Below, one piece after another: positions 1,260-11,659 of a stretch of DNA of 64,000 nt. A program made the translations under genes and the position numbers. Numbering within the stretch: the stretch's first letter is position 1; every line of letters begins with the position of its first letter. The DNA is taken from the IMG/VR virus record IMGVR_UViG_3300046660_000488, positions 514,293-578,292 of that record; one strand, written 5' to 3'. The notes beneath the pieces were generated by a model. That model was not told where the DNA came from and made no database searches. It saw only the letters and a list, made by a program, of their open reading frames with translations.

Positions 1260-1334
1260 GGTTCATTAGCTCAGCGGTAGAGCAATCGCTTGATAAGCGA
1301 TAGGTCGCTGGTTCGAATCCAGCATGAACTACCA
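1260..1334 (+). tRNA. tRNA-Ile(GAT)
   Basis: Cloverleaf, loop TTGATAA, TTCGAAT T-loop, encoded CCA. Confidence 0.95.
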
Positions 1335-1365
1335 AACAGTCGAGAGACAACCCCGAGTACTTTGT

Positions 1366-1439
1366 TCTTCTATAGCTCAGCCCGGTAGAGCAATCGCTTG
1401 ATAAGCGATAGGCCGTAGGTTCAAATCCTACTGGAAGAA
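1366..1439 (+). tRNA. tRNA-Ile(GAT), no encoded CCA
   Basis: TCTTCTA/TGGAAGA acceptor, loop TTGATAA; acceptor stem extended by flanks. Confidence 0.85.
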
Positions 1440-1457
1440 CAAAGTACTTGGGTCCAC

Positions 1458-1532
1458 GGGCCTGTAGTTCAACGGGAGAACGTCTGCATTACAAGCAGAA
1501 TGTCGGGGGTTCAACTCCCTCCGGGCCTACCA
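1458..1532 (+). tRNA. tRNA-Val(TAC)
   Basis: Cloverleaf, loop ATTACAA, CCA. Confidence 0.9.
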
Positions 1533-1737
1533 AAATACTGCTTGACAACGGTTCAACCGAACTTTAGGCAAGCAACCGCGCTCTTCGGGAAGCTCTCTTT
1601 GCTTACCGGACGGATTCCAAAACCTACCATAGGTGCGGAGTCGTGTAAAGGGGCCGGGGTCTTTGACATCGTTGATTTGCGTAACGAATTGGTCGGGCTT
1701 TACCAGAGCCCGGCCGACTTCGGGGACGTGTGTTTGA

Positions 1738-1809
1738 TGAGGGATAGTTCAGCGGTAGAACGCCTGTCTCTGGAACAGGATGTCGTAGGTTCGATCCCTA
1801 CTCCCTCAT
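1738..1809 (+). tRNA. tRNA-Gln(CTG), no encoded CCA
   Basis: TGAGGGA/TCCCTCA acceptor, loop CTCTGGA; 16-bp flanking extension. Confidence 0.85.
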
Positions 1810-1830
1810 CAAACACACGTCCCCATAGGT

Positions 1831-1906
1831 TCGGGGGTAGTTCAGTTGGTAGAACGGCAGTTTTTGGTACTGCATGTCGAAGGTTCGAGTCCTTCTCCCC
1901 GATCCA
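1831..1906 (+). tRNA. tRNA-Gln(TTG)
   Basis: Cloverleaf, loop TTTTGGT, CCA. Confidence 0.9.
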
Positions 1907-1928
1907 AACACTCAGTATTCATCCTTGT

Positions 1929-2014
1929 TGGGGAATGGTGTAATGGTAACATCCCGGCCTTTGACTCCGGAGACCGAGAAGGATTTGTAGGTTCGAGCCC
2001 TACTTCCCCAGCCA
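1929..2014 (+). tRNA. tRNA-Gln(TTG) with long variable region
   Basis: TGGGGAA/TTCCCCA acceptor, loop CTTTGAC, 16-nt variable region, CCA. Confidence 0.85.
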
Positions 2015-2043
2015 GCATGAATATTGAAGACAATGTACTTTGA

Positions 2044-2120
2044 CGCGGAGTGGAGCAGTCAGGTAGCTCGTTTGGCTCATAACCAAAAGGTCGCGGGATC
2101 GAAGCCCGCCTCCGCATCCA
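2044..2120 (+). tRNA. tRNA-Met(CAT), initiator-like (C1.A72)
   Basis: CGCGGAG/CTCCGCA acceptor, loop CTCATAA, T-loop ATCGAAG, CCA. Confidence 0.9.
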
Positions 2121-2129
2121 AGTACATTG

Positions 2130-2359
2130 AGGCCGCGTAACAAGAGAGTGAAGCAGTGATGCCCCGTCATCTGTACCTGACGGGGAGGCCAGAAACAGAC
2201 CGTGCATACGCCCCACGGTCTCTAAATATGGAACACGGACCCACTGGGGCCGTGCGGGAGCCAGCACGACCCGCCGTGGTCTAAGTCCGTAAGGGGCAGA
2301 AAGCGGCACACCCGGTACTGGCGGGTAACCTATTTGGTCGAATGACCATCACCTTTTTT

Positions 2360-2360
<1 letters not shown>
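2130..2360 (+). ncRNA. Candidate structured RNA of unknown family
   Basis: Dense helices 2162-2169/2178-2185, 2197-2204/2214-2221, 2234-2238/2250-2254, 2269-2275/2320-2326; no convincing ORF. Confidence 0.4.
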
Positions 2361-2437
<77 letters not shown>

Positions 2438-2455
2438 ATTGTCCATGTGCTTCGT

Positions 2456-2532
2456 CTAGGCGTAGCGCAGTCTGGTAGCGCGCCTGCTTTGGGAGCAGGA
2501 TGTCGCAGGTTCGAATCCTGCCGCCTAGACCA
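2456..2532 (+). tRNA. tRNA-Pro(TGG)
   Basis: Cloverleaf, loop TTTGGGA, CCA. Confidence 0.95.
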
Positions 2533-2555
2533 AGCACATGGACTTTCACCTACGG

Positions 2556-2638
2556 CAGTCGGTGAGGATGTAACAGGTTCGATCCCTGACCACAGGCTCT
2601 TGCGAGCGTGTGAGTAAGCCCATCCAAACCGACTACTG
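2556..2638 (+). ncRNA. Candidate Y-RNA-like (permuted tRNA-like) RNA
   Basis: Terminal stem AGTCGGT/ACCGACT + GGATG/CATCC enclosing a T-arm CAGG-TTCGATC-CCTG and a further hairpin; no anticodon arm or CCA. Confidence 0.4.
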
Positions 2639-2639
2639 A

Positions 2640-2727
2640 TCCTCACGACCCAGCTTGGTGACGGGCGCCGACTGTTAATCGGATGACATGGAAATGTGGC
2701 AAGGTTCGAAACCTTGGTGAGGAACCA
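2640..2727 (+). tRNA. tRNA-Asn(GTT) with long variable arm
   Basis: TCCTCAC/GTGAGGA acceptor, loop CTGTTAA, variable hairpin ACAT-GGAA-ATGT, CCA. Confidence 0.85.
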
Positions 2728-2797
2728 TTTCGCAGTTGACTTGCATTTAAGTGCTTGTCATAAATAAGGAACACGAAGGTGCTTCGGCACACTTTGT

Positions 2798-2873
2798 TCT
2801 CTCGTAGCTCAGTTGGTAGAGCGTCTGACTGTTAATCAGAATGTCGTAGGTTCGAGTCCTACCGGGGGAGCCA
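2798..2873 (+). tRNA. tRNA-Asn(GTT)
   Basis: Canonical cloverleaf, G73, CCA. Confidence 0.95.
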
Positions 2874-3011
2874 TTTCTACTACGGTGAGCAAGTAACCGC
2901 CTAACGTCCTTTGGACGAAGGTGCTCCAGCACAAGACGCTGGGCTGACAAAGCACTTGCACAATTCTCTTATCCTGCTTTTCGGTGTTTCGCCAATTTTC
3001 GGGATAACGAT

Positions 3012-3087
<76 letters not shown>

Positions 3088-3151
3088 ATTTTCTAATCTC
3101 GCGCAGGGCGCCGTGATGAACGGATAAGTCCGCTGCACGCCTTTCTTGGAT

Positions 3152-3257
3152 GGGCTGGACGCCTCCTGACATCGACGTCAGGGTAGAGGTACGGAACCTC
3201 GGGCTACGGCGACAGGGTTCGCGACCCTACGCGGTTCGATCCCGCGCCGGTCCACCA
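3152..3257 (+). ncRNA. tRNA-like RNA with alanine acceptor identity and no canonical D/anticodon arms
   Basis: GGGCTGG/CCGGTCC acceptor (G3.U70), A73, CCA, T-arm CGCGG-TTCGATC-CCGCG; 106 nt. Confidence 0.7.
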
Positions 3258-3266
3258 AGCAGTTTT

Positions 3267-3342
3267 GGGGCATTAGCTCATCTGGTAGAGCGCGACAATC
3301 GCAATGTCGAGGTGAGCGGTTCAAGTCCGCTATGCTCCACCA
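3267..3342 (+). tRNA. tRNA-Ala(CGC)
   Basis: Cloverleaf, loop ATCGCAA, G3.U70, CCA. Confidence 0.95.
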
Positions 3343-3343
3343 A

Positions 3344-3646
3344 TCACCGGCCGTTCAGGAATTTCTCCGAGCAGATGTAATCGCAGACGGAGAACACCAC
3401 GGCTTCCGCACCAGACTCGAAGGCGTCGCTGCTGTGATCGCCGGACCACTGGGGCTTCGCGAAACTGCACGACACGCCGTCCTCGTGGACGCCGACGTCG
3501 ATGATGTGGCCTTCGCCTTCGAACTTGGTCAGCGTCTCTTTCGCCCACACCACCGCTTCATAGAGGTCTTCGGTGATCTCGGATGGGACATTCGCATACA
3601 TGGCGAAAATCTGGTCCTTGAGCGCTTGGGGATAGTGGGCGGTCAT
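3344..3646 (-). CDS. Hypothetical protein, antisense within tRNA array
   Basis: 100-aa ORF filling the gap between tRNAs, coding-like composition. Confidence 0.7.
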   Translation of the reverse strand: MTAHYPQALKDQIFAMYANVPSEITEDLYEAVVWAKETLTKFEGEGHIIDVGVHEDGVSCSFAKPQWSGDHSSDAFESGAEAVVFSVCDYICSEKFLNGR

Positions 3647-3709
3647 GACGATCTCGGGTTTGGTTTACCAAATCCTACACACAACACCCGGCGGGTTCAA
3701 CCCCGCTAC

Positions 3710-3785
3710 GGGGCATTAGCTCATCTGGTAGAGCGCCTGTTTTGCAAGCAGGAGGTGTGGGGTTCGAGTCCCCAATGCTCCACCA
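3710..3785 (+). tRNA. tRNA-Ala(TGC)
   Basis: Cloverleaf, loop TTTGCAA, CCA. Confidence 0.95.
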
Positions 3786-3791
3786 AACAAT

Positions 3792-3866
3792 GCGTCTGTA
3801 GCTCAGTGGGAGAGCGCTTCCGTGACATGGAAGAGGCCGACAGTTCAATCCTGTCCAGATGCACCA
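3792..3866 (+). tRNA. tRNA-Val(GAC)
   Basis: Cloverleaf, loop GTGACAT, CCA. Confidence 0.95.
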
Positions 3867-3940
3867 TTTCACTACCCAACCCCGGAGGATAACCAAATGA
3901 CCCCGCTAAACGCAGGAAAGTAAGCAAGAAATTCCGAAAG

Positions 3941-4219
3941 ATGATCGACGTGTACGGGATATTCACCCGAGACATTGAAGAGCATCTTGACTTCAGTGAC
4001 GACATGCTCTTGGAAATGTACCAAGCAGAGTCAGTCGGTGGAGACTGTCATCATCGGAATGGCTTCTACCATGGAAAGAAATTCATGGATGTGAGCGTCA
4101 AGATGTGGCGCGAGGACATGTCGAAAGGCACGTTGTTCCTCTGCGAACTCTACGACGATCCTCTCCTGCCCAACTGGTGGTTGGACAAAATCTTCGGTCG
4201 GTCTGGTCCTCCAGACTGA
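3941..4219 (+). CDS. Hypothetical protein (true start may be the out-of-frame ATG at 3897)
   Basis: 92-aa ORF; frame is open from 3893; strong SD GGAGG precedes ATG 3897. Confidence 0.7.
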   Translation: MIDVYGIFTRDIEEHLDFSDDMLLEMYQAESVGGDCHHRNGFYHGKKFMDVSVKMWREDMSKGTLFLCELYDDPLLPNWWLDKIFGRSGPPD

Positions 4220-4226
4220 CCAACAT

Positions 4227-4303
4227 GTAGCCGTAGCTCAGTCTGGTAGAGCGCCTGCCTGAAAAGCAGGGCGTCGGTGGTTCAAATCCACCCGGTTGCA
4301 CCA
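4227..4303 (+). tRNA. tRNA-Phe(GAA)
   Basis: Cloverleaf, loop CTGAAAA, CCA. Confidence 0.95.
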
Positions 4304-4304
4304 T

Positions 4305-4871
4305 TTACTCCTTCTGGAGTTTCTTTTCTCGCCAGAGGCGGCTGTTGGGGCCATCGCCATTCCACCCGTCAAACAGCCCTTCATCCTGTGCGGCTCGCAT
4401 CATCGGAGCAACACGAATCCACGCTTGGTACGGCATAGTTCCTCGGGTGTGGTTGCATCGAACACACGAGGTGTTGACGTTGTTCTGCAAGTGGCCAAGG
4501 CTATTGTCGATCCGGTCCAGCGTAATGCGGACCTCTGGTGGTTCAACACCGCAATAAAAGCACGGCTTGGCCACGCATTCGGCCACGAATTCGAGCGTGA
4601 GGTCGCAGTCGCGGTTCTTTCGCTTGTCGGTATAGCGGCAGTCTTGCAGCACGTTGCGGGCTACGGTCATGTGATCGTTCTCTCTCCGAGCTTTGCGACG
4701 AACCGCATGGCGACGCTCTTCGGCTTGTTGGAACCCTTCCGGGTTGCTGATGAACTGTTCGCGGCGGCAGGGGCCGCATTTCTTTCGGCGCCGACCGGCG
4801 CTCATGTGGAACGCGCTCTCGGGGCGATCCTCTCCGCAATATTTGCACAACATAGTGCCATTAAGGCACAT
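4305..4871 (-). CDS. HNH (His-Me finger) homing endonuclease-like protein
   Basis: CKYC/CGPC zinc motifs and CFYCG...LDRIDNSLGHLQNNVNTSCVRCN HNH signature. Confidence 0.85.
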   Translation of the reverse strand: MCLNGTMLCKYCGEDRPESAFHMSAGRRRKKCGPCRREQFISNPEGFQQAEERRHAVRRKARRENDHMTVARNVLQDCRYTDKRKNRDCDLTLEFVAECVAKPCFYCGVEPPEVRITLDRIDNSLGHLQNNVNTSCVRCNHTRGTMPYQAWIRVAPMMRAAQDEGLFDGWNGDGPNSRLWREKKLQKE

Positions 4872-4907
4872 CTGGTTTTCCAAATTCAATATTTGGTTAA
4901 CCACTTT

Positions 4908-4984
4908 CAGGGCGTAGCGCAGCATGGTAGCGCACTTGGTCGGGAACCAAGGGGTCGCAGGTTCAAATCCTGCCGTTCTGACCA
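4908..4984 (+). tRNA. tRNA-Pro (loop TCGGGAA; GGG in canonical register)
   Basis: C1-G72, A73, CCA; non-canonical C33/A37. Confidence 0.85.
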
Positions 4985-5003
4985 TTTCGCCTACGGGCAT
5001 TAT

Positions 5004-5080
5004 CTATGTGTAGCTCAGTCTGGTAGAGCGCTGCTTTCGGGAAGCAGAGGCCGCAGGTTCAAATCCTGCCACGTAGACCA
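5004..5080 (+). tRNA. tRNA-Pro(CGG)
   Basis: Cloverleaf, loop TTCGGGA, CCA. Confidence 0.95.
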
Positions 5081-5103
5081 AAACACCGGCCACGAGCCAT
5101 CAT

Positions 5104-5180
5104 CTGAGTGTAACGCAGTCTGGTAGCGTGCCTGTTTCGGTAACAGGAGGTCGCGGGTTCAAATCCTGCCACTCAGACCA
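5104..5180 (+). tRNA. tRNA-Pro(CGG), U37 variant
   Basis: Cloverleaf, loop TTCGGTA, CCA. Confidence 0.9.
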
Positions 5181-5299
5181 ATTTCCTCGAACGAGGATAC
5201 GACTTTGGGAAGCTGACCGTTCCAGTGAGTTCGGCAGGGATGACCACCCGGCAGCTAGGCCTCGTCAGCCCGGCATGTCAGGCTAACCCAATTGACCAC

Positions 5300-5376
5300 G
5301 GTGCTGTAGCTCAGTCTGGTAGAGCAGCGGGCTCATAACTCGCTTGTCGCAGGTTCAAATCCTGCCAGCACCACCA
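5300..5376 (+). tRNA. tRNA(CAT): elongator Met or Ile2
   Basis: Cloverleaf, G1-C72, loop CTCATAA, CCA; Met versus lysidine-Ile cannot be resolved by eye. Confidence 0.9.
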
Positions 5377-5382
5377 ACCTTC

Positions 5383-5457
5383 GGGTGATTAGCTCAGTGG
5401 TAGAGCGCTGCTTTCACACGGCAGAGGTCACTGGTTCAAGCCCAGTATCACCCACCA
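5383..5457 (+). tRNA. tRNA-Val(CAC)
   Basis: Cloverleaf, loop TTCACAC, CCA. Confidence 0.95.
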
Positions 5458-5485
5458 AGAAAAAGGGGCCGAAGCCCCCTGATCC
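5458..5485 (-). terminator. Terminator-like hairpin for the minus-strand gene
   Basis: AAAAAGGGG-CCGAAG-CCCC immediately beyond the stop at 5486. Confidence 0.5.
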
Positions 5486-5728
5486 TTACTCTTCGACGTA
5501 CTGGATTTCTCGCCAAAAATCTCCGGTCGGCGTCACGGTAAAACCACCGGTGTTGGAGACGATCCTGACGTAATGTTCTGCCAGTTCGAGCACGGCCGTT
5601 TCGAGATAGCGGCCGTCGTCTTCGGTGGTGGACGTCAGAACGACCGTGCCGGTCGTGTTGAGCGGATCGAGCGCACCGGCGCGAACGGTGTCGAGCAACG
5701 CTTCGAAGTATACGTCGTAAGTAGCCAT
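5486..5728 (-). CDS. Hypothetical protein
   Basis: MATYDVYF start with SD AAGGA upstream. Confidence 0.7.
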   Translation of the reverse strand: MATYDVYFEALLDTVRAGALDPLNTTGTVVLTSTTEDDGRYLETAVLELAEHYVRIVSNTGGFTVTPTGDFWREIQYVEE

Positions 5729-5803
5729 GAAATGTGTCCTTGAAATGGGTTTAGTATCCAGCCACAAGGATAGCACTGGCCGCTTATTATAAGCAAAATA
5801 TAC

Positions 5804-5879
5804 GCCGCCTTAGCTCAGTTGGTAGAGCGCGTCCTTGGTAAGGACGAGGCCACGGGTTCAAGTCCCGTAGGTGGCTCCA
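5804..5879 (+). tRNA. tRNA-Thr(GGT)
   Basis: Cloverleaf, loop TTGGTAA, CCA. Confidence 0.95.
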
Positions 5880-5893
5880 TTTTCCCTCCTGAT

Positions 5894-5968
5894 GCCGGGG
5901 TAGCTCAGGGGTAGAGCAGCGGGCTGAAAATCCGCGTGTCGGAGGTTCGAATCCTCTCCCCGGCACCA
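5894..5968 (+). tRNA. tRNA-Phe(GAA)
   Basis: Cloverleaf, loop CTGAAAA, CCA. Confidence 0.95.
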
Positions 5969-5969
5969 T

Positions 5970-6044
5970 GGTCGCGTAGCTCAGCGGGAGAGCGTCCCCT
6001 TGACGTGGGGAAGGTCGCAGGTTCAATCCCTGCCGCGACTACCA
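5970..6044 (+). tRNA. tRNA-Val(GAC)
   Basis: Cloverleaf, loop TTGACGT, CCA. Confidence 0.95.
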
Positions 6045-6074
6045 TTTTTCTCAACCAGAAAGGAACCGACTCCC

Positions 6075-7171
6075 ATGGGGTTCAGCCGCTAAGTCCAGAG
6101 AGCCTTCAACGGTATCTGGCGATCAAAGACCTAACTGACCCGGCGACGGGTAAACACGCAATCAACGTTGTCCTCCAGAAATTGACGAAGGCGGTCCAAG
6201 ACTGGGCGGGTTTACACCCGGAAGTCCTGCGTTCCTCCCCAATCGTTTCCATCCAAGACAATTACGACCGCCTCTACTATGAGGCGGACGCTGTCGCACG
6301 CTCGTCGCGCTATTCGCATTATGTGGATGACACCCACATCTTGCGGACGCACACGACGGCGGCCGTGCCCGGCTATCTGCGCGAGACCACGGACGACCGT
6401 CTGATGGTTCTGCCGGGCATCGTCTATCGCCGCGACGTCATGGACAAGATGCACGTCGGCGAACCACACCAAGTCGATCTGTGGATCGTCAAGCAGGCCC
6501 GCCTGCGGCGCCGCGATCTTGAGGCCATGATCTCGGCCATCATGACTGCGATCCTACCCGGCCGCGTGTACCGCTGCAACGAGACCATCCATCCCTACAC
6601 CGTCAACGGCCTTGAGGTCGAAGTGCAGGTTGGCGACCGTTGGGTCGAGGTCTTGGAATGCGGCGAGGCCCACCCATGGGTTCTGAACGACGCTGGGCTG
6701 TCTTCAGCCACATGGTCGGGACTGGCCATGGGCATCGGTCTGGACCGTCTGGTGATGCTCCTGAAGGGCGTGGAGGACATCCGGCTGCTACGGAGCACCG
6801 ACAAGCGCGTCTACGGCCAGATGCAGACCATGCAGCCCTATCTACCGGTCAGCGATCAGCCGAGCGCTAAGCGGGACCTGTCCATCGTCGTTGACGAAGT
6901 GGACATGGAACTGTTGGGCGACAAGGTCCGCACTTTGCTGGGCGACCGGGCCGAGTGGATGGAGGAAATCATCCACGTCGGCGACTACGGCTGGCACGAT
7001 GTTCCGGACGCTGCTCGCCAACGTCTGGGTATGGGGCAGGATCAACGGAACCTCGTTATCCGGCTGATCATGCGCTCGCCGACCCAGAGCATCCCTCGCG
7101 AGGTCGCAAACGAGGTCTACGCGCAAGTCTACGAAGGTCTGCATCAGGGCTCCACGGTCGGCTATCGCTGA
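6075..7171 (+). CDS. Monomeric PheRS-like class II ligase (catalytic domain + FDX-ACB); start requires a -1 shift at codon 2-3
   Basis: LRTHTTA, motif 2 PGIVYRRD..H..EPHQVD, motif 3 GLAMGIGLDRLVML, C-terminal RDLS..RSPTQS FDX-ACB-like; SD-preceded ATG 6075 is out of frame. Confidence 0.85.
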
Positions 7172-7204
7172 CCGTGGATGGTTCTGTGCCACCTAAATAG
7201 TTCC

Positions 7205-7594
7205 ATGGATCGTGAAGCCAAACTCGCTGAACTCATTGATCGCGTCAAGGATTTGCCGGACAAGGCGACCACGCGCGGATACACCTCATATCTGATCATC
7301 GTTCCCCATCATGACATGGCGGGCGACGTATCGATGGCCGTCTCTGAAGAATTCAGGGAATTTGGATACGGCGTTGACAAGGTGACGAAGTCTGAAGTTC
7401 GTGGAGACGAGTTTAGGGTCCTCGTGCGGCCCATCAGTGCTGCTGCGACGAACATCCACAACTTGACCTTCCACGTGTTCTGCATTCCGGGTGATGACGG
7501 ACTGACGGGTCATCAGAAGCAAACATTGCAGAAGATGCTTGAAGCGTTCAGCTACAAGGCACTGGAAACTGCTGATCTCCGCATCGTCTACTGA
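7205..7594 (+). CDS. Hypothetical protein
   Basis: ORF downstream of TAAATA (7194). Confidence 0.7.
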   Translation: MDREAKLAELIDRVKDLPDKATTRGYTSYLIIVPHHDMAGDVSMAVSEEFREFGYGVDKVTKSEVRGDEFRVLVRPISAAATNIHNLTFHVFCIPGDDGLTGHQKQTLQKMLEAFSYKALETADLRIVY

Positions 7595-10688: not shown

Positions 10689-10943
10689 TTATTCCGTGAT
10701 CTCGACGAGACGAAAAGCGACGGCCTCGCAGGGGAACTTTTCCTTGGCGGCTTGCTTCTCGGCCTCTTCCTCGACGATCCACAGACGGTCGAAGCGATGA
10801 CCCCAGCGGTCTTCGTCGGTGTGCGTGTTGTGGGCGTTGAAGATTTGCTTGAAACGGCCGTCGCCGATCCGACGCACTTTCCACACCCGCGACGGATCGT
10901 CGGGTGTGGTGATGTGGCGAGTGTTCTCGTAGACGTAGGTCAT
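10689..10943 (-). CDS. Hypothetical protein
   Basis: Coupled minus-strand ORF. Confidence 0.7.
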   Translation of the reverse strand: MTYVYENTRHITTPDDPSRVWKVRRIGDGRFKQIFNAHNTHTDEDRWGHRFDRLWIVEEEAEKQAAKEKFPCEAVAFRLVEITE

Positions 10944-11611
10944 CAGGCGACTTTCGCGGCGTCTTCGGCTTCTCGTTCGGCGCGGCGCGCCGCTCGATAG
11001 TCGTTGATGATCTTCTCGACGCTCGCATAGACGGACGGATCACCGTCCTTCAGGTGCGGCAGGAGATCACGCTTCTCCGGAACGTAGCGCTGGGCGAAAT
11101 CCGGATCGTCGTTGATGATCGAATCCAAGTTGTCCTCGGAATCGACCAGCTTGATCGTCTGGACTTCGGCTGGCTGCGCGGCCGTGTGATCGCGGTTCAG
11201 CGCCATCCGGACCTTGCGGTTTCCATCCCACGGCATGGCGACGTCGGTCAGGCCGTCCACGTACAGAGCGACCAGATCGCCGAATTCCTGACGGATCAAC
11301 TCGATGGTGATGCCGGGGACCATGTACAGAACGATGTCACCAGCCTTGAAGGCCGGGCGAGAACAGAATTCGCCGGTCTTGACGATGACCTCGCCATTAC
11401 CATCAACGAATTTTCGAGTGTCCTCGACGGTGTCATGCAGCAGGGCTGCGACAACCATTTCGACGGTGGCGCCGGGCAGTGCGGCGATCCGCAGGGCCAG
11501 ACGGCGCGGGTGGACGATATACGGCTCGTCCGTATACCTACGCCGCTGACCGACAGCAGCGTGCGCGACCATGGCGAACAGGTCGGCCTTCACGATTAAA
11601 GGATGGTTCAT
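10943..11611 (-). CDS. HD-domain hydrolase, RelA/SpoT hydrolase (SAH/Mesh1)-like
   Basis: AH..GQ.R....PYIVHP, AALLHDTVEDT, EFGD.VA..VDGLTD, IKL.D..DN motifs. Confidence 0.85.
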   Translation of the reverse strand: MNHPLIVKADLFAMVAHAAVGQRRRYTDEPYIVHPRRLALRIAALPGATVEMVVAALLHDTVEDTRKFVDGNGEVIVKTGEFCSRPAFKAGDIVLYMVPGITIELIRQEFGDLVALYVDGLTDVAMPWDGNRKVRMALNRDHTAAQPAEVQTIKLVDSEDNLDSIINDDPDFAQRYVPEKRDLLPHLKDGDPSVYASVEKIINDYRAARRAEREAEDAAKVA

Positions 11612-11659
11612 ATCTATCATGCCGCGCATTATGCGGCATGGATACAATTTCGTCAACCA

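What the first reader, a model, noticed from the sequence alone, without database searches (positions are those of the whole stretch)
6075..7171. Single-chain PheRS-like ligase encoded at the end of a phage tRNA array
SEEN: class II motifs 2 and 3 fused to a FDX-ACB-like C-terminal domain (about 365 aa), placed after the last tRNAs; the array has two tRNA-Phe genes. KNOWN: bacterial PheRS is alpha2beta2, whereas this catalytic+ACB chimera is the mitochondrial architecture. From memory it resembles the uncharacterised PheS-related 'SrmL' family (verify). INFERENCE: the phage context suggests its substrate is tRNA-Phe or one of the unusual tRNA-like RNAs.
Basis: partly seen in the sequence, partly recalled or inferred. 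Interest (0 to 1): 0.62.

Follow-up and report, generated by a model that had tools for sequence, protein, structure and literature searches.

The report
Frameshift-gated PheRS-like ligase in huge phage
A 578-kb phage carries a single-chain, mitochondrial-type relative of phenylalanyl-tRNA synthetase (SrmL family) whose reading frame can apparently be entered only by a one-base backward ribosome slip at a phenylalanine codon. That suggests an enzyme made only when charged tRNA-Phe runs short.

Summary
The gene is real. The open frame 6077-7171 (+) follows the last tRNA of a 24-tRNA array that holds two tRNA-Phe(GAA). It scores 438.6 bits on NCBIfam NF051887 "PheS-related mystery ligase SrmL" (cut-off 300).

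This is not an error. An independent 175x contig is identical. Twenty-eight loci of the alphaproteobacterial and phage clade share a Shine-Dalgarno-like (SD-like) AAAGG, 8-11 nt, ATG GGR TTY N6 TAA, always one base off the SrmL frame. Many have an in-frame stop just upstream. Other clades have an ordinary in-frame ATG at that position.

Bacterial members of the clade also carry an upstream Phe-rich leader peptide and a terminator, as in a pheST-type attenuator.

My best reading is an auxiliary monomeric PheRS-type ligase for tRNA-Phe. Its expression would depend on a -1 slip of tRNA-Gly on G_GGR while the Phe codon waits. The conserved signal is shown by comparison. The slip, its dependence on Phe-tRNA and Phe charging are inferred. 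The amino-acid pocket differs from true PheRS (F to H, F to Y, E to D).

The parts
4227..4303 (+). tRNA-Phe(GAA), 77 nt, canonical-type anticodon loop (CUGAAAA)
   Evidence: ARAGORN, Rfam tRNA 65.1 bits, sequence
5894..5968 (+). tRNA-Phe(GAA), 75 nt, canonical bacterial type. It lies 107 nt upstream of the ligase start site.
5970..6044 (+). tRNA-Val(GAC), the last tRNA of the array. The ligase leader begins directly after it.
6059..6065 (+). Shine-Dalgarno-like AAAGGAA, 9 nt before the ATG. AAAGG is conserved 8-11 nt before the ATG across the clade.
6075..6092 (+). Mini-ORF ATG GGG TTC AGC CGC TAA (M-G-F-S-R-stop) in the +1 frame relative to SrmL. It contains the proposed slip site G6077-GGG6080 and the Phe codon 6081-6083.
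   Evidence: for the window. The pattern (ATG|TTG) G[GA][AG] TT[CT] N6 TAA lies exactly 53 nt before the D codon of the conserved DLTD motif in 28 loci of the clade (18 distinct versions). It is found in none of about 110 loci of other clades.
6077..7171 (+). SrmL reading frame: 364 sense codons plus the stop at 7169-7171. With the Met of ATG 6075 the predicted product is 365 aa.
   Evidence: dN/dS is 0.12-0.29 against relatives. Only 8 conservative departures occur in 134 conserved columns.
6095..6119 (+). Conserved hairpin (CCAGA/UCUGG outer stem, GCC/GGU inner stem) starting 3 nt after the mini-ORF stop. It is a possible stimulator of the slip.
   Evidence: RNAalifold on 26 sequences gives 93.8% of cells paired. 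One pair covaries at synonymous sites (UA 13, CG 7, GC 2). 0 of 500 shuffles reach the observed score. The window's own hairpin folds at -10.1 kcal/mol, z -2.3.
6152..6820 (+). Class IIc catalytic core (Pfam tRNA-synt_2d) with the motif 2 and motif 3 arginines
6851..7147 (+). C-terminal ferredoxin-fold anticodon-binding-like domain (FDX-ACB)
   Evidence: Pfam E 0.004 in this protein, and matches in 21 of 41 relatives. The fold aligns with the same domain of mtPheRS. The C-terminal part of the PheT model hits the same domain of a bacterial SrmL.

Best explanation
Shown:
- The gene belongs to the SrmL family. It is a single chain made of the PheRS alpha catalytic core plus a ferredoxin-fold anticodon-binding domain, the architecture of mitochondrial PheRS.
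- It is an accessory gene. SrmL-bearing bacteria keep canonical pheS and pheT.
- In the alphaproteobacterial and phage clade the frame has no start codon of its own. A conserved SD-like motif and an ATG open a 5-codon mini-ORF, M-G-F-x-x-stop, one base out of register.

Inferred mechanism:
1. Ribosomes start at ATG 6075 and read GGG.
2. If Phe-tRNA-Phe arrives promptly, they read TTC and stop at TAA 6090. No enzyme is made.
3. If the Phe codon stays empty, peptidyl-tRNA-Gly slips back one base on G_GGG.
4. GTT (Val) then enters the A site and the 365-aa ligase is made.

Inferred function: the enzyme adenylates phenylalanine, or a close aromatic analogue, and charges tRNA-Phe(GAA), including the phage's own copies. 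It would act as a back-up PheRS switched on by shortage of charged tRNA-Phe.
For: Identity:
- NF051887 scores 438.6 bits against a cut-off of 300.
- The AlphaFold2 model has pLDDT 93.2. Its top fold hits are mtPheRS, E 1e-26, over both domains.
- Five of five SrmL-bearing genomes keep pheS and pheT.

Recoding signal:
- 28 loci carry the motif at exactly -53 nt from the D codon of DLTD.
- At least 12 of them have an in-frame stop five codons (two in L026) before the Gly codon, with no start codon in between.
- Other clades have an in-frame ATG or GTG at -18 codons, which is the same position shifted by one base.
- Rare codons are fixed in the leader. xTT, GGG (GGA in 4 phage loci) and YTA/ATA occur in 25 of 25 leaders. 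Elsewhere in the same genes GTT is 15% of Val codons, GGG 20% of Gly codons and CTA 3.6% of Leu codons.
- The base after RTT is always a pyrimidine, which keeps codon 3 of the mini-ORF as Phe.
- One phage (L016) has reverted: an in-frame TTG stands exactly at the Gly codon.

Selection: dN/dS is 0.12-0.29. The source run gives the same sequence at 175x.

Link to phenylalanine:
- 17 of 19 bacterial clade members carry an upstream leader ORF with 3-4 Phe in its last 22 codons, followed by a conserved terminator hairpin and a T-run. In other clades the count is 7 of 100, against 3 of 100 in the reverse-complement control.
- tRNA-Phe genes flank the gene in 7 related phage loci.
Against: - Nothing has been measured. 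There are no RNA or protein data, and no RNA run holds the stretch.
- The amino-acid pocket is not that of any proven PheRS. Against mtPheRS: F232 becomes H, F234 becomes Y, E159 becomes D, S121 becomes T. The adenine-stacking F155 becomes P. H, Y, D and P are invariant in SrmL; the Thr is nearly so.
- The scores for the pheS and pheS_mito equivalog models are far below their cut-offs.
- I know of no precedent for a P-site-only -1 slip at codon 2.
- The hairpin starts 11 nt after the A-site codon, which is further than in classical -1 sites.
- The L003/L004/L009/L015 phages have TTG GAG TTT, a much less slippery site.
- The window phage lacks both the attenuator and the special tRNA-Phe variant that sits beside the gene in its relatives.
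Confidence: 0.6

Rival explanations
1. The recoding signal is real, but the enzyme is not a phenylalanine ligase. It would load tRNA-Phe, or another acceptor, with a different aromatic or polar amino acid, or modify the tRNA. That would make it an aaRS paralogue of the GluQRS or PoxA kind.
For: Family-invariant replacements occur at the two ring-stacking Phe residues (H, Y), at the amino-group Glu (D) and at the adenine-stacking Phe (P). The NCBIfam curators call it a 'mystery ligase'. The pheS and pheS_mito scores are below their cut-offs.
Against: Expression is tied twice to decoding of Phe codons: once by the leader attenuator and once by the Phe codon in the slip site. That fits a supplier of Phe-tRNA-Phe best. 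The residues at the floor of the pocket (Thr and Ala, which I recall correspond to E. coli T251 and A294) and the motif 2 and 3 arginines are kept.
Confidence: 0.2
2. The frame offset has no regulatory meaning. Either it is a tolerated indel corrected at a constant low rate, or translation starts in frame at a non-canonical codon (ATT 6044, CTG 6116) or re-initiates after the mini-ORF.
For: An annotator gave the Rhizobium copy an ATT start. CTG 6116 is conserved. The family model begins only at residue 26 of the translated stretch. SD use in this phage is weak overall: 22% of ORFs against 11% background.
Against: In at least 12 loci an in-frame stop lies five codons (two in L026) before the Gly codon, with no near-cognate start between them. 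ATG, GGR, TTY and TAA are frozen at otherwise synonymous sites in 18 distinct versions. The ATG sits exactly where other clades start.
Confidence: 0.12
3. In this particular phage the gene is on its way out and is not expressed.
For: It has no in-frame start. The phage lacks the tRNA-Phe variant found next to the gene in relatives. The terminal branch is long, 0.44.
Against: The 'missing start' is the ancestral state of the whole clade. The frame stays open for 364 codons. All 53 invariant family columns are kept, and only 8 conservative changes occur in 134 conserved columns.
Confidence: 0.08

Closest known systems
NCBIfam NF051887, PheS-related mystery ligase SrmL
   Same: Full-length match above the curated cut-off, with the same two-domain layout.
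   Different: This copy is phage-borne and sits in a tRNA array next to tRNA-Phe. No function is published: a full-text search for SrmL found nothing. I found no description of the recoding leader or the attenuator reported here.
Mitochondrial PheRS (human FARS2; PDB 3CMQ, 3TUP)
   Same: A single chain of catalytic core plus FDX-ACB domain. It is the best sequence and fold match.
   Different: Identity is only 21-22%. The TIGR00469 score is 120 bits against a cut-off of 258. The Phe-pocket and adenine-stacking residues differ.
Bacterial PheRS alpha (PheS), and the E. coli pheST operon with its pheM leader attenuator (established knowledge)
   Same: The catalytic core is homologous. Bacterial SrmL genes have a Phe-rich leader peptide plus a terminator, the same control logic as pheM.
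   Different: There is no beta subunit and no editing domain. The TIGR00468 score is 111 bits against a cut-off of 237. The phage copy has no attenuator.
Autoregulatory frameshifts: prfB (RF2, +1 at a slow stop codon) and dnaX (-1 with an upstream SD-like stimulator). Reviewed in PMC5009743.
   Same: A slow A site or an upstream SD-like element drives a frame change that decides whether the product is made.
   Different: Here the shift would be -1, at the second codon of the message, at a sense codon for the amino acid that the enzyme handles. The review lists no aaRS case.
tRNA synthetases of huge phages (Al-Shayeb et al. 2020, PMC7162821)
   Same: Huge phages carry up to 67 tRNAs and up to 15 synthetases. 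This genome has 69 tRNAs and three matches to the class II tRNA-synt_2b core.
   Different: This is a paralogue of unknown activity rather than a host-type synthetase, and it carries its own recoding control.

Membership tests
SrmL (NF051887) | HMM score above the curated cut-off over the whole model | tested here: met
   438.6 bits against a cut-off of 300, model positions 1-349 of 349
SrmL (NF051887) | PheS-type core fused to a C-terminal FDX-ACB-like domain in one chain | tested here: met
Mitochondrial PheRS (TIGR00469) | Equivalog score above the cut-off | tested here: not met
   120.3 bits against a cut-off of 258.35
Mitochondrial PheRS (TIGR00469) | Phenylalanine-pocket residues (F232, F234, E159 of 3CMQ) | tested here: not met
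   Replaced by H, Y and D, each invariant in the family
Mitochondrial PheRS (TIGR00469) | Two-domain fold in a single chain | tested here: met
   TM 0.77-0.81 over 376-403 aligned columns
Bacterial PheS (TIGR00468) in an alpha2beta2 enzyme | Equivalog score above the cut-off, and a PheT partner | tested here: not met
   111.5 bits against a cut-off of 237.45. No B3_4 domain is found in the phage genome.
Class II aminoacyl-tRNA synthetase | Motif 2 and motif 3 arginines | tested here: met
   R118 and R224 in model numbering align with R143 and R282 of mtPheRS and are invariant
Class II aminoacyl-tRNA synthetase | Amino-acid activation and tRNA charging | not testable with these tools
   Needs biochemistry
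Programmed -1 ribosomal frameshift | The downstream frame lacks its own start, and the offset is conserved among diverged relatives | tested here: met
   28 loci. At least 12 of them have an in-frame stop just upstream.
Programmed -1 ribosomal frameshift | A conserved slippery site constrained at the nucleotide level | tested here: met
   G_GGR followed by TTY, with rare codons fixed. Four phage loci have the weaker G_GAG.
Programmed -1 ribosomal frameshift | A stimulatory element | tested here: inconclusive
   An SD-like AAAGG lies 8-11 nt upstream. A hairpin has one covarying pair but an 11-nt spacer.
Programmed -1 ribosomal frameshift | The trans-frame protein is observed | not testable with these tools
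   No RNA or proteome data
Leader-peptide transcription attenuator (pheM/pheL type) | A short ORF rich in the regulatory codon, followed by an intrinsic terminator | tested here: not met
   Absent upstream of the window gene and of the related phage genes. Present in 17 of 19 bacterial clade members.

The most novel reading that the evidence does not exclude
SrmL would be a starvation-induced monomeric PheRS whose synthesis is switched by a natural 'hungry-codon' sensor: a -1 slip at the second codon that happens only while a Phe codon waits for Phe-tRNA-Phe. That would be the first synthetase-type gene autoregulated by frameshifting. Bacteria would stack it on a Phe-leader attenuator, and huge phages would have captured it together with tRNA-Phe genes. 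The family could also be the bacterial counterpart of the mitochondrial PheRS architecture.
Probability: 0.4. Interest if true: 0.88.

Novelty: new variant of a known kind. Interest (0 to 1): 0.75.

Why it matters
- It gives the uncharacterised SrmL "mystery ligase" a concrete, testable job. Two independent Phe-codon sensors upstream of the gene tie it to the supply of Phe-tRNA-Phe.
- If the slip is real, it is a compact sensor of charged tRNA (about 45 nt for the SD-like motif, ATG GGR TTY and the stop; about 60 nt with the hairpin). It would also be a new class of recoding event at the very start of a message.
- It explains why gene callers truncate these genes, or give them odd start codons, in phages, plasmids and chromosomes.
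- It shows that bacteria have a mitochondrial-style single-chain PheRS fold.

Tried and rejected
- Assembly error in the G run: rejected. The Logan contig at 175x is identical, and the offset is shared by 28 loci.
- Pseudogene: rejected on selection.
- Initiation at CAG 6056 by a phage initiator-like tRNA-Gln(CUG): rejected. That tRNA has a paired 1-72 end and no initiator features.
- The upstream ATGAAAGG ATG as the true start: rejected. Its spacing to the second ATG varies (16, 17 or 19 nt), so its frame is not conserved.
- Transcriptional slippage: unlikely, because the G runs are only 2-4 long.
- An outer helix pairing the slip site with the DLTD codons: no covariation.
- Guilt by association in bacteria: 62 loci show no conserved neighbour and no adjacent tRNA-Phe.
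- The tRNA-Phe variant with loop UUGAAAC: not found in the window or in the rest of the genome, nor in four other SrmL-bearing huge phages; a fifth has only a one-mismatch match that is not a tRNA.
- Near-identical phage records: none.
- Literature on SrmL or on frameshift-regulated synthetases: nothing found.
- A first all-against-all BLAST timed out and was repeated on a smaller set.

Full report
Observation. The window is the last 64 kb of a 578,292-bp virus record with direct terminal repeats. ARAGORN finds 24 tRNA genes at 1260-6044, among them tRNA-Phe(GAA) at 4227-4303 and 5894-5968. The array ends with tRNA-Val at 5970-6044 (Rfam agrees). A long open frame follows and ends at 7171. The stated start does not work, however. 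Translation from ATG 6075 reads M-G-F-S-R and stops at TAA 6090-6092. The conserved frame begins at G6077, one base back from the codon after the ATG. It holds no in-frame ATG, GTG or TTG between the tRNA and TTG 6182, which is where the gene caller started its truncated 329-aa product. The sequence is not an assembly slip: a Logan contig of the probable source run, at depth 175, covers 5800-7300 with no difference and no gap.

Identity. The translated frame scores 438.6 bits on NCBIfam NF051887, 'PheS-related mystery ligase SrmL' (cut-off 300), over the whole model. It stays far below the cut-offs of pheS_mito (120.3 against 258.35) and pheS (111.5 against 237.45). Pfam finds the class II core (F) at E 4e-35. 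The FDX-ACB domain matches weakly here (E 0.004), but it matches 21 of 41 relatives, best E 1.8e-8. An AlphaFold2 model built on 41 sequences has mean pLDDT 93.2 and pTM 0.88. Foldseek ranks human mitochondrial PheRS first (3CMQ and 5MGW, E 1e-26, TM 0.77-0.81, 376-403 aligned columns covering both domains). Bacterial PheS chains match only the core. The ESM Atlas look-alikes carry the same names.

Active site. In the HMMER alignments to mtPheRS the motif 2 arginine (R143) and the motif 3 arginine (R282) are kept. So are Q157, T235 and A275. Several other positions differ: F232 becomes His, F234 becomes Tyr, E159 becomes Asp, S121 becomes Thr, and F155 becomes Pro. The roles of these residues (ring stacking, amino-group binding, adenine stacking) are from my knowledge of PheRS structures. 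His, Tyr, Asp and Pro are invariant across the family; the Thr is nearly so. The enzyme therefore looks like an adenylate-forming ligase with an aromatic-sized but altered pocket. Its amino-acid specificity is not settled.

Distribution and context.
- The family is rare and patchy. In one genome per species, 378 stretches encode a relative. They come from Actinomycetota, Myxococcota, Gemmatimonadota and Pseudomonadota. At least 496 more occur in metagenomes.
- Five of five SrmL-bearing genomes tested keep canonical pheS and pheT, so SrmL is an extra gene.
- 62 bacterial loci share no conserved neighbour and have no adjacent tRNA-Phe.
- On a maximum-likelihood tree the window groups with four other phage loci (SH-aLRT 97). 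That group sits inside a clade (SH-aLRT 99) of huge-phage and alphaproteobacterial sequences: Xanthobacteraceae, Paracoccaceae and a Rhizobium repABC replicon.
- The phage relatives come from contigs of 181-635 kb, plus fragments.
- In seven loci of the nearer phage group the gene lies beside tRNA-Phe(GAA). In five of them a distinct tRNA-Phe follows the stop codon directly. Its anticodon loop is UUGAAAC, inside an invariant 13-mer.
- The window genome has 69 tRNAs but only the two ordinary tRNA-Phe. It has no PheT domain and no second PheS-type gene. It has three matches to the class II tRNA-synt_2b core.

The start. Relatives show that the offset is the rule, not an accident.
- In 28 loci of the alphaproteobacterial and phage clade, the pattern (ATG or TTG) G[GA][AG] TT[CT] N6 TAA lies exactly 53 nt before the D codon of the conserved DLTD motif. 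It is always one base out of the SrmL frame. There are 18 distinct versions, and the peptide is M-G-F-x-x in all but the four phage loci with TTG GAG TTT.
- One further member has ATG GGG TTT TGA.
- An AAAGG motif lies 8-11 nt upstream.
- In at least 12 loci an in-frame TGA or TAG sits five codons (two in L026) before the Gly codon, with no start codon between them.
- None of about 110 loci from other clades has the pattern. They have an ordinary in-frame ATG or GTG about 18 codons before DLTD, which is the same place shifted by one base.
- The leader is constrained as nucleotides. The SrmL-frame codons there are always xAT, GGG (GGA in four phage loci), GTT or ATT, and YTA or ATA. Elsewhere in the same genes GTT is 15% of Val codons, ATT 17% of Ile, GGG 20% of Gly, and CTA and TTA 3.6% and 1.9% of Leu.
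- The base after RTT is always a pyrimidine, although the residue there varies (Q, S, L, P, R). That keeps codon 3 of the mini-ORF as Phe.
- One phage (L016) has an in-frame TTG in place of the Gly codon. This fits the predicted N-terminus.
- The genes are under purifying selection, with dN/dS 0.12-0.29, including pairs that both lack a start. The window protein departs from 134 conserved columns only eight times, always conservatively.
- A hairpin beginning 3 nt after the TAA (window 6095-6119) is 93.8% paired in 26 sequences. One pair covaries at synonymous sites, and 0 of 500 shuffles reach the observed score. It folds at -10.1 kcal/mol in the window.

A second Phe sensor in bacteria.
- Upstream of the bacterial clade members lies a short ORF whose last 22 codons hold 3-4 Phe. 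Its stop is 101-126 nt before the ATG. This holds for 17 of 19 loci with enough sequence.
- A conserved G+C-rich hairpin and a T-run follow. It appears as a terminator-like site in L018. It is present in all 17 aligned sequences, with compensatory changes in three pairs.
- A segment complementary to the 5' arm of the terminator precedes it. That suggests an antiterminator, but I judged this by eye only.
- Other clades show such ORFs in 7 of 100 loci, against 3 of 100 in the reverse-complement control.
- This is the layout of the E. coli pheST (pheM) attenuator, which is established knowledge.
- The phage copies lack it. They keep only the mini-ORF.

Mechanism. Shown by comparison: a conserved initiation site one base out of frame, a G_GGR run, an invariant Phe codon, a fixed TAA, and no alternative start. 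Inferred: after initiation and one translocation, peptidyl-tRNA-Gly sits on GGR with TTY in the A site. If Phe-tRNA-Phe is slow to arrive, tRNA-Gly re-pairs one base back on GGG, GTT or ATT enters the A site, and SrmL is made. Otherwise the ribosome finishes the pentapeptide and leaves. The SD-like pairing, then 11-14 nt behind the P site, and the hairpin at the leading edge of the ribosome may both help. SD-like stimulators of -1 shifts and 'hungry' codons are described in PMC5009743. The product would be Met-Gly-Val..., 365 aa, the same length as in clades with a normal start. Two separate Phe-codon sensors upstream of a PheRS paralogue that carries an anticodon-binding domain argue that its job is to supply Phe-tRNA-Phe. 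This is inference, and the altered pocket is the main caveat.

Rivals.
(i) A ligase for another amino acid or another acceptor. The pocket changes favour this reading; the Phe-linked control argues against it.
(ii) Non-canonical in-frame initiation or constant 'correction' of an indel. The upstream in-frame stops and the frozen synonymous sites argue against it.
(iii) A decaying gene in this phage. The shared ancestral leader and the intact, conserved frame argue against it.

Known and new. Huge phages with many tRNAs and synthetases are known (PMC7162821). SrmL is a curated but uncharacterised family, and full-text searches found nothing on it. I found no report of a synthetase-type gene controlled by frameshifting. 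The gene is a new phage-borne member of a known family. The start-proximal, Phe-codon-linked -1 signal and the attenuator appear to be undescribed.

Limits.
- There are no expression data, and no RNA run holds the stretch.
- The laid runs were contigs, so variant frequencies are unknown.
- Many of the 28 loci are related, so the counts are not independent events.
- The large representative search, domain-by-domain homologue searches and a dimer prediction were not run.
- The relation of SrmL to the origin of mitochondrial PheRS is untested.

Noticed in passing
L003:9013-9087, L004:9366-9440, L009:4258-4332, L014:7120-7196, L015:6345-6418, L016:4578-4652: A second kind of tRNA-Phe(GAA) sits directly beside the ligase gene in related phages. 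Its anticodon loop is UUGAAAC, it has an altered D arm, and it holds an invariant 13-mer (CGGTTGAAACCCG). It is absent from the window genome. It may be the ligase's preferred substrate.
   Followed up: partly
G000:C1:109999-110155 (outside the window): Two adjacent tRNAs with anticodon CUA (amber suppressors; ARAGORN labels them 'Pyl') occur in the same phage genome. A tRNA-like gene with a 2-base anticodon call lies at 457430-457499.
   Followed up: no
window 2044-2120: This tRNA-Met(CAU) has a C1 x A72 mismatch at the top of the acceptor stem, which is the hallmark of a bacterial initiator tRNA. It is encoded by the phage.
   Followed up: no
window 1929-2014 and 2640-2727: tRNA-Gln(UUG) and tRNA-Asn(GUU) are unusually long (86 and 88 nt); ARAGORN draws a long extra arm in tRNA-Gln. 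The long tRNA-Asn recurs in relatives (L003, L004, L014, L015).
   Followed up: no
window 10943-11656 (-); L003:16159-16839; L008:6432-7034: A protein with an HD_4 (RelA/SpoT-type hydrolase) domain recurs within a few kb of the ligase in three phage lineages. In L008 the ligase directly follows a polynucleotide kinase-phosphatase-like gene (HAD_PNKP plus AAA_33), which hints at a tRNA-repair neighbourhood.
   Followed up: no
L017, L018, L022, L104-L107, L110, L114, L178: about 17 nt before the mini-ORF ATG: A second ATG is embedded in the SD-like motif (ATGAAAGG) in 12 of 27 leaders. Its frame relative to SrmL varies, so it is unlikely to be the start. It could be a decoy or a further control point.
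   Followed up: partly
L018, L022, L104, L105 and others: about 60-70 nt before the leader-peptide ATG: A conserved TTGACA box precedes the Phe-rich leader ORF of the bacterial genes. This suggests that each SrmL gene is a self-contained unit of promoter, attenuator, recoding site and gene.
   Followed up: no
whole genome G000: Shine-Dalgarno-like tetramers precede only 22% of long ORFs, against 11% background. A+T-rich words (AAATA, ATTTC, CATTT) are the commonest upstream pentamers. This hints at SD-poor initiation in this phage and its host.
   Followed up: no
L013:3001-3903: A 533-kb provirus-class record encodes a PheS-like protein only 29% identical to the window's. It sits among tRNA-Leu genes and is possibly a different paralogue.
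   Followed up: no
L007:8001-9179: The Rhizobium rhizogenes copy lies next to repABC genes, so it is plasmid-borne. It is annotated with an ATT start codon, which probably reflects the missing in-frame start.
   Followed up: partly
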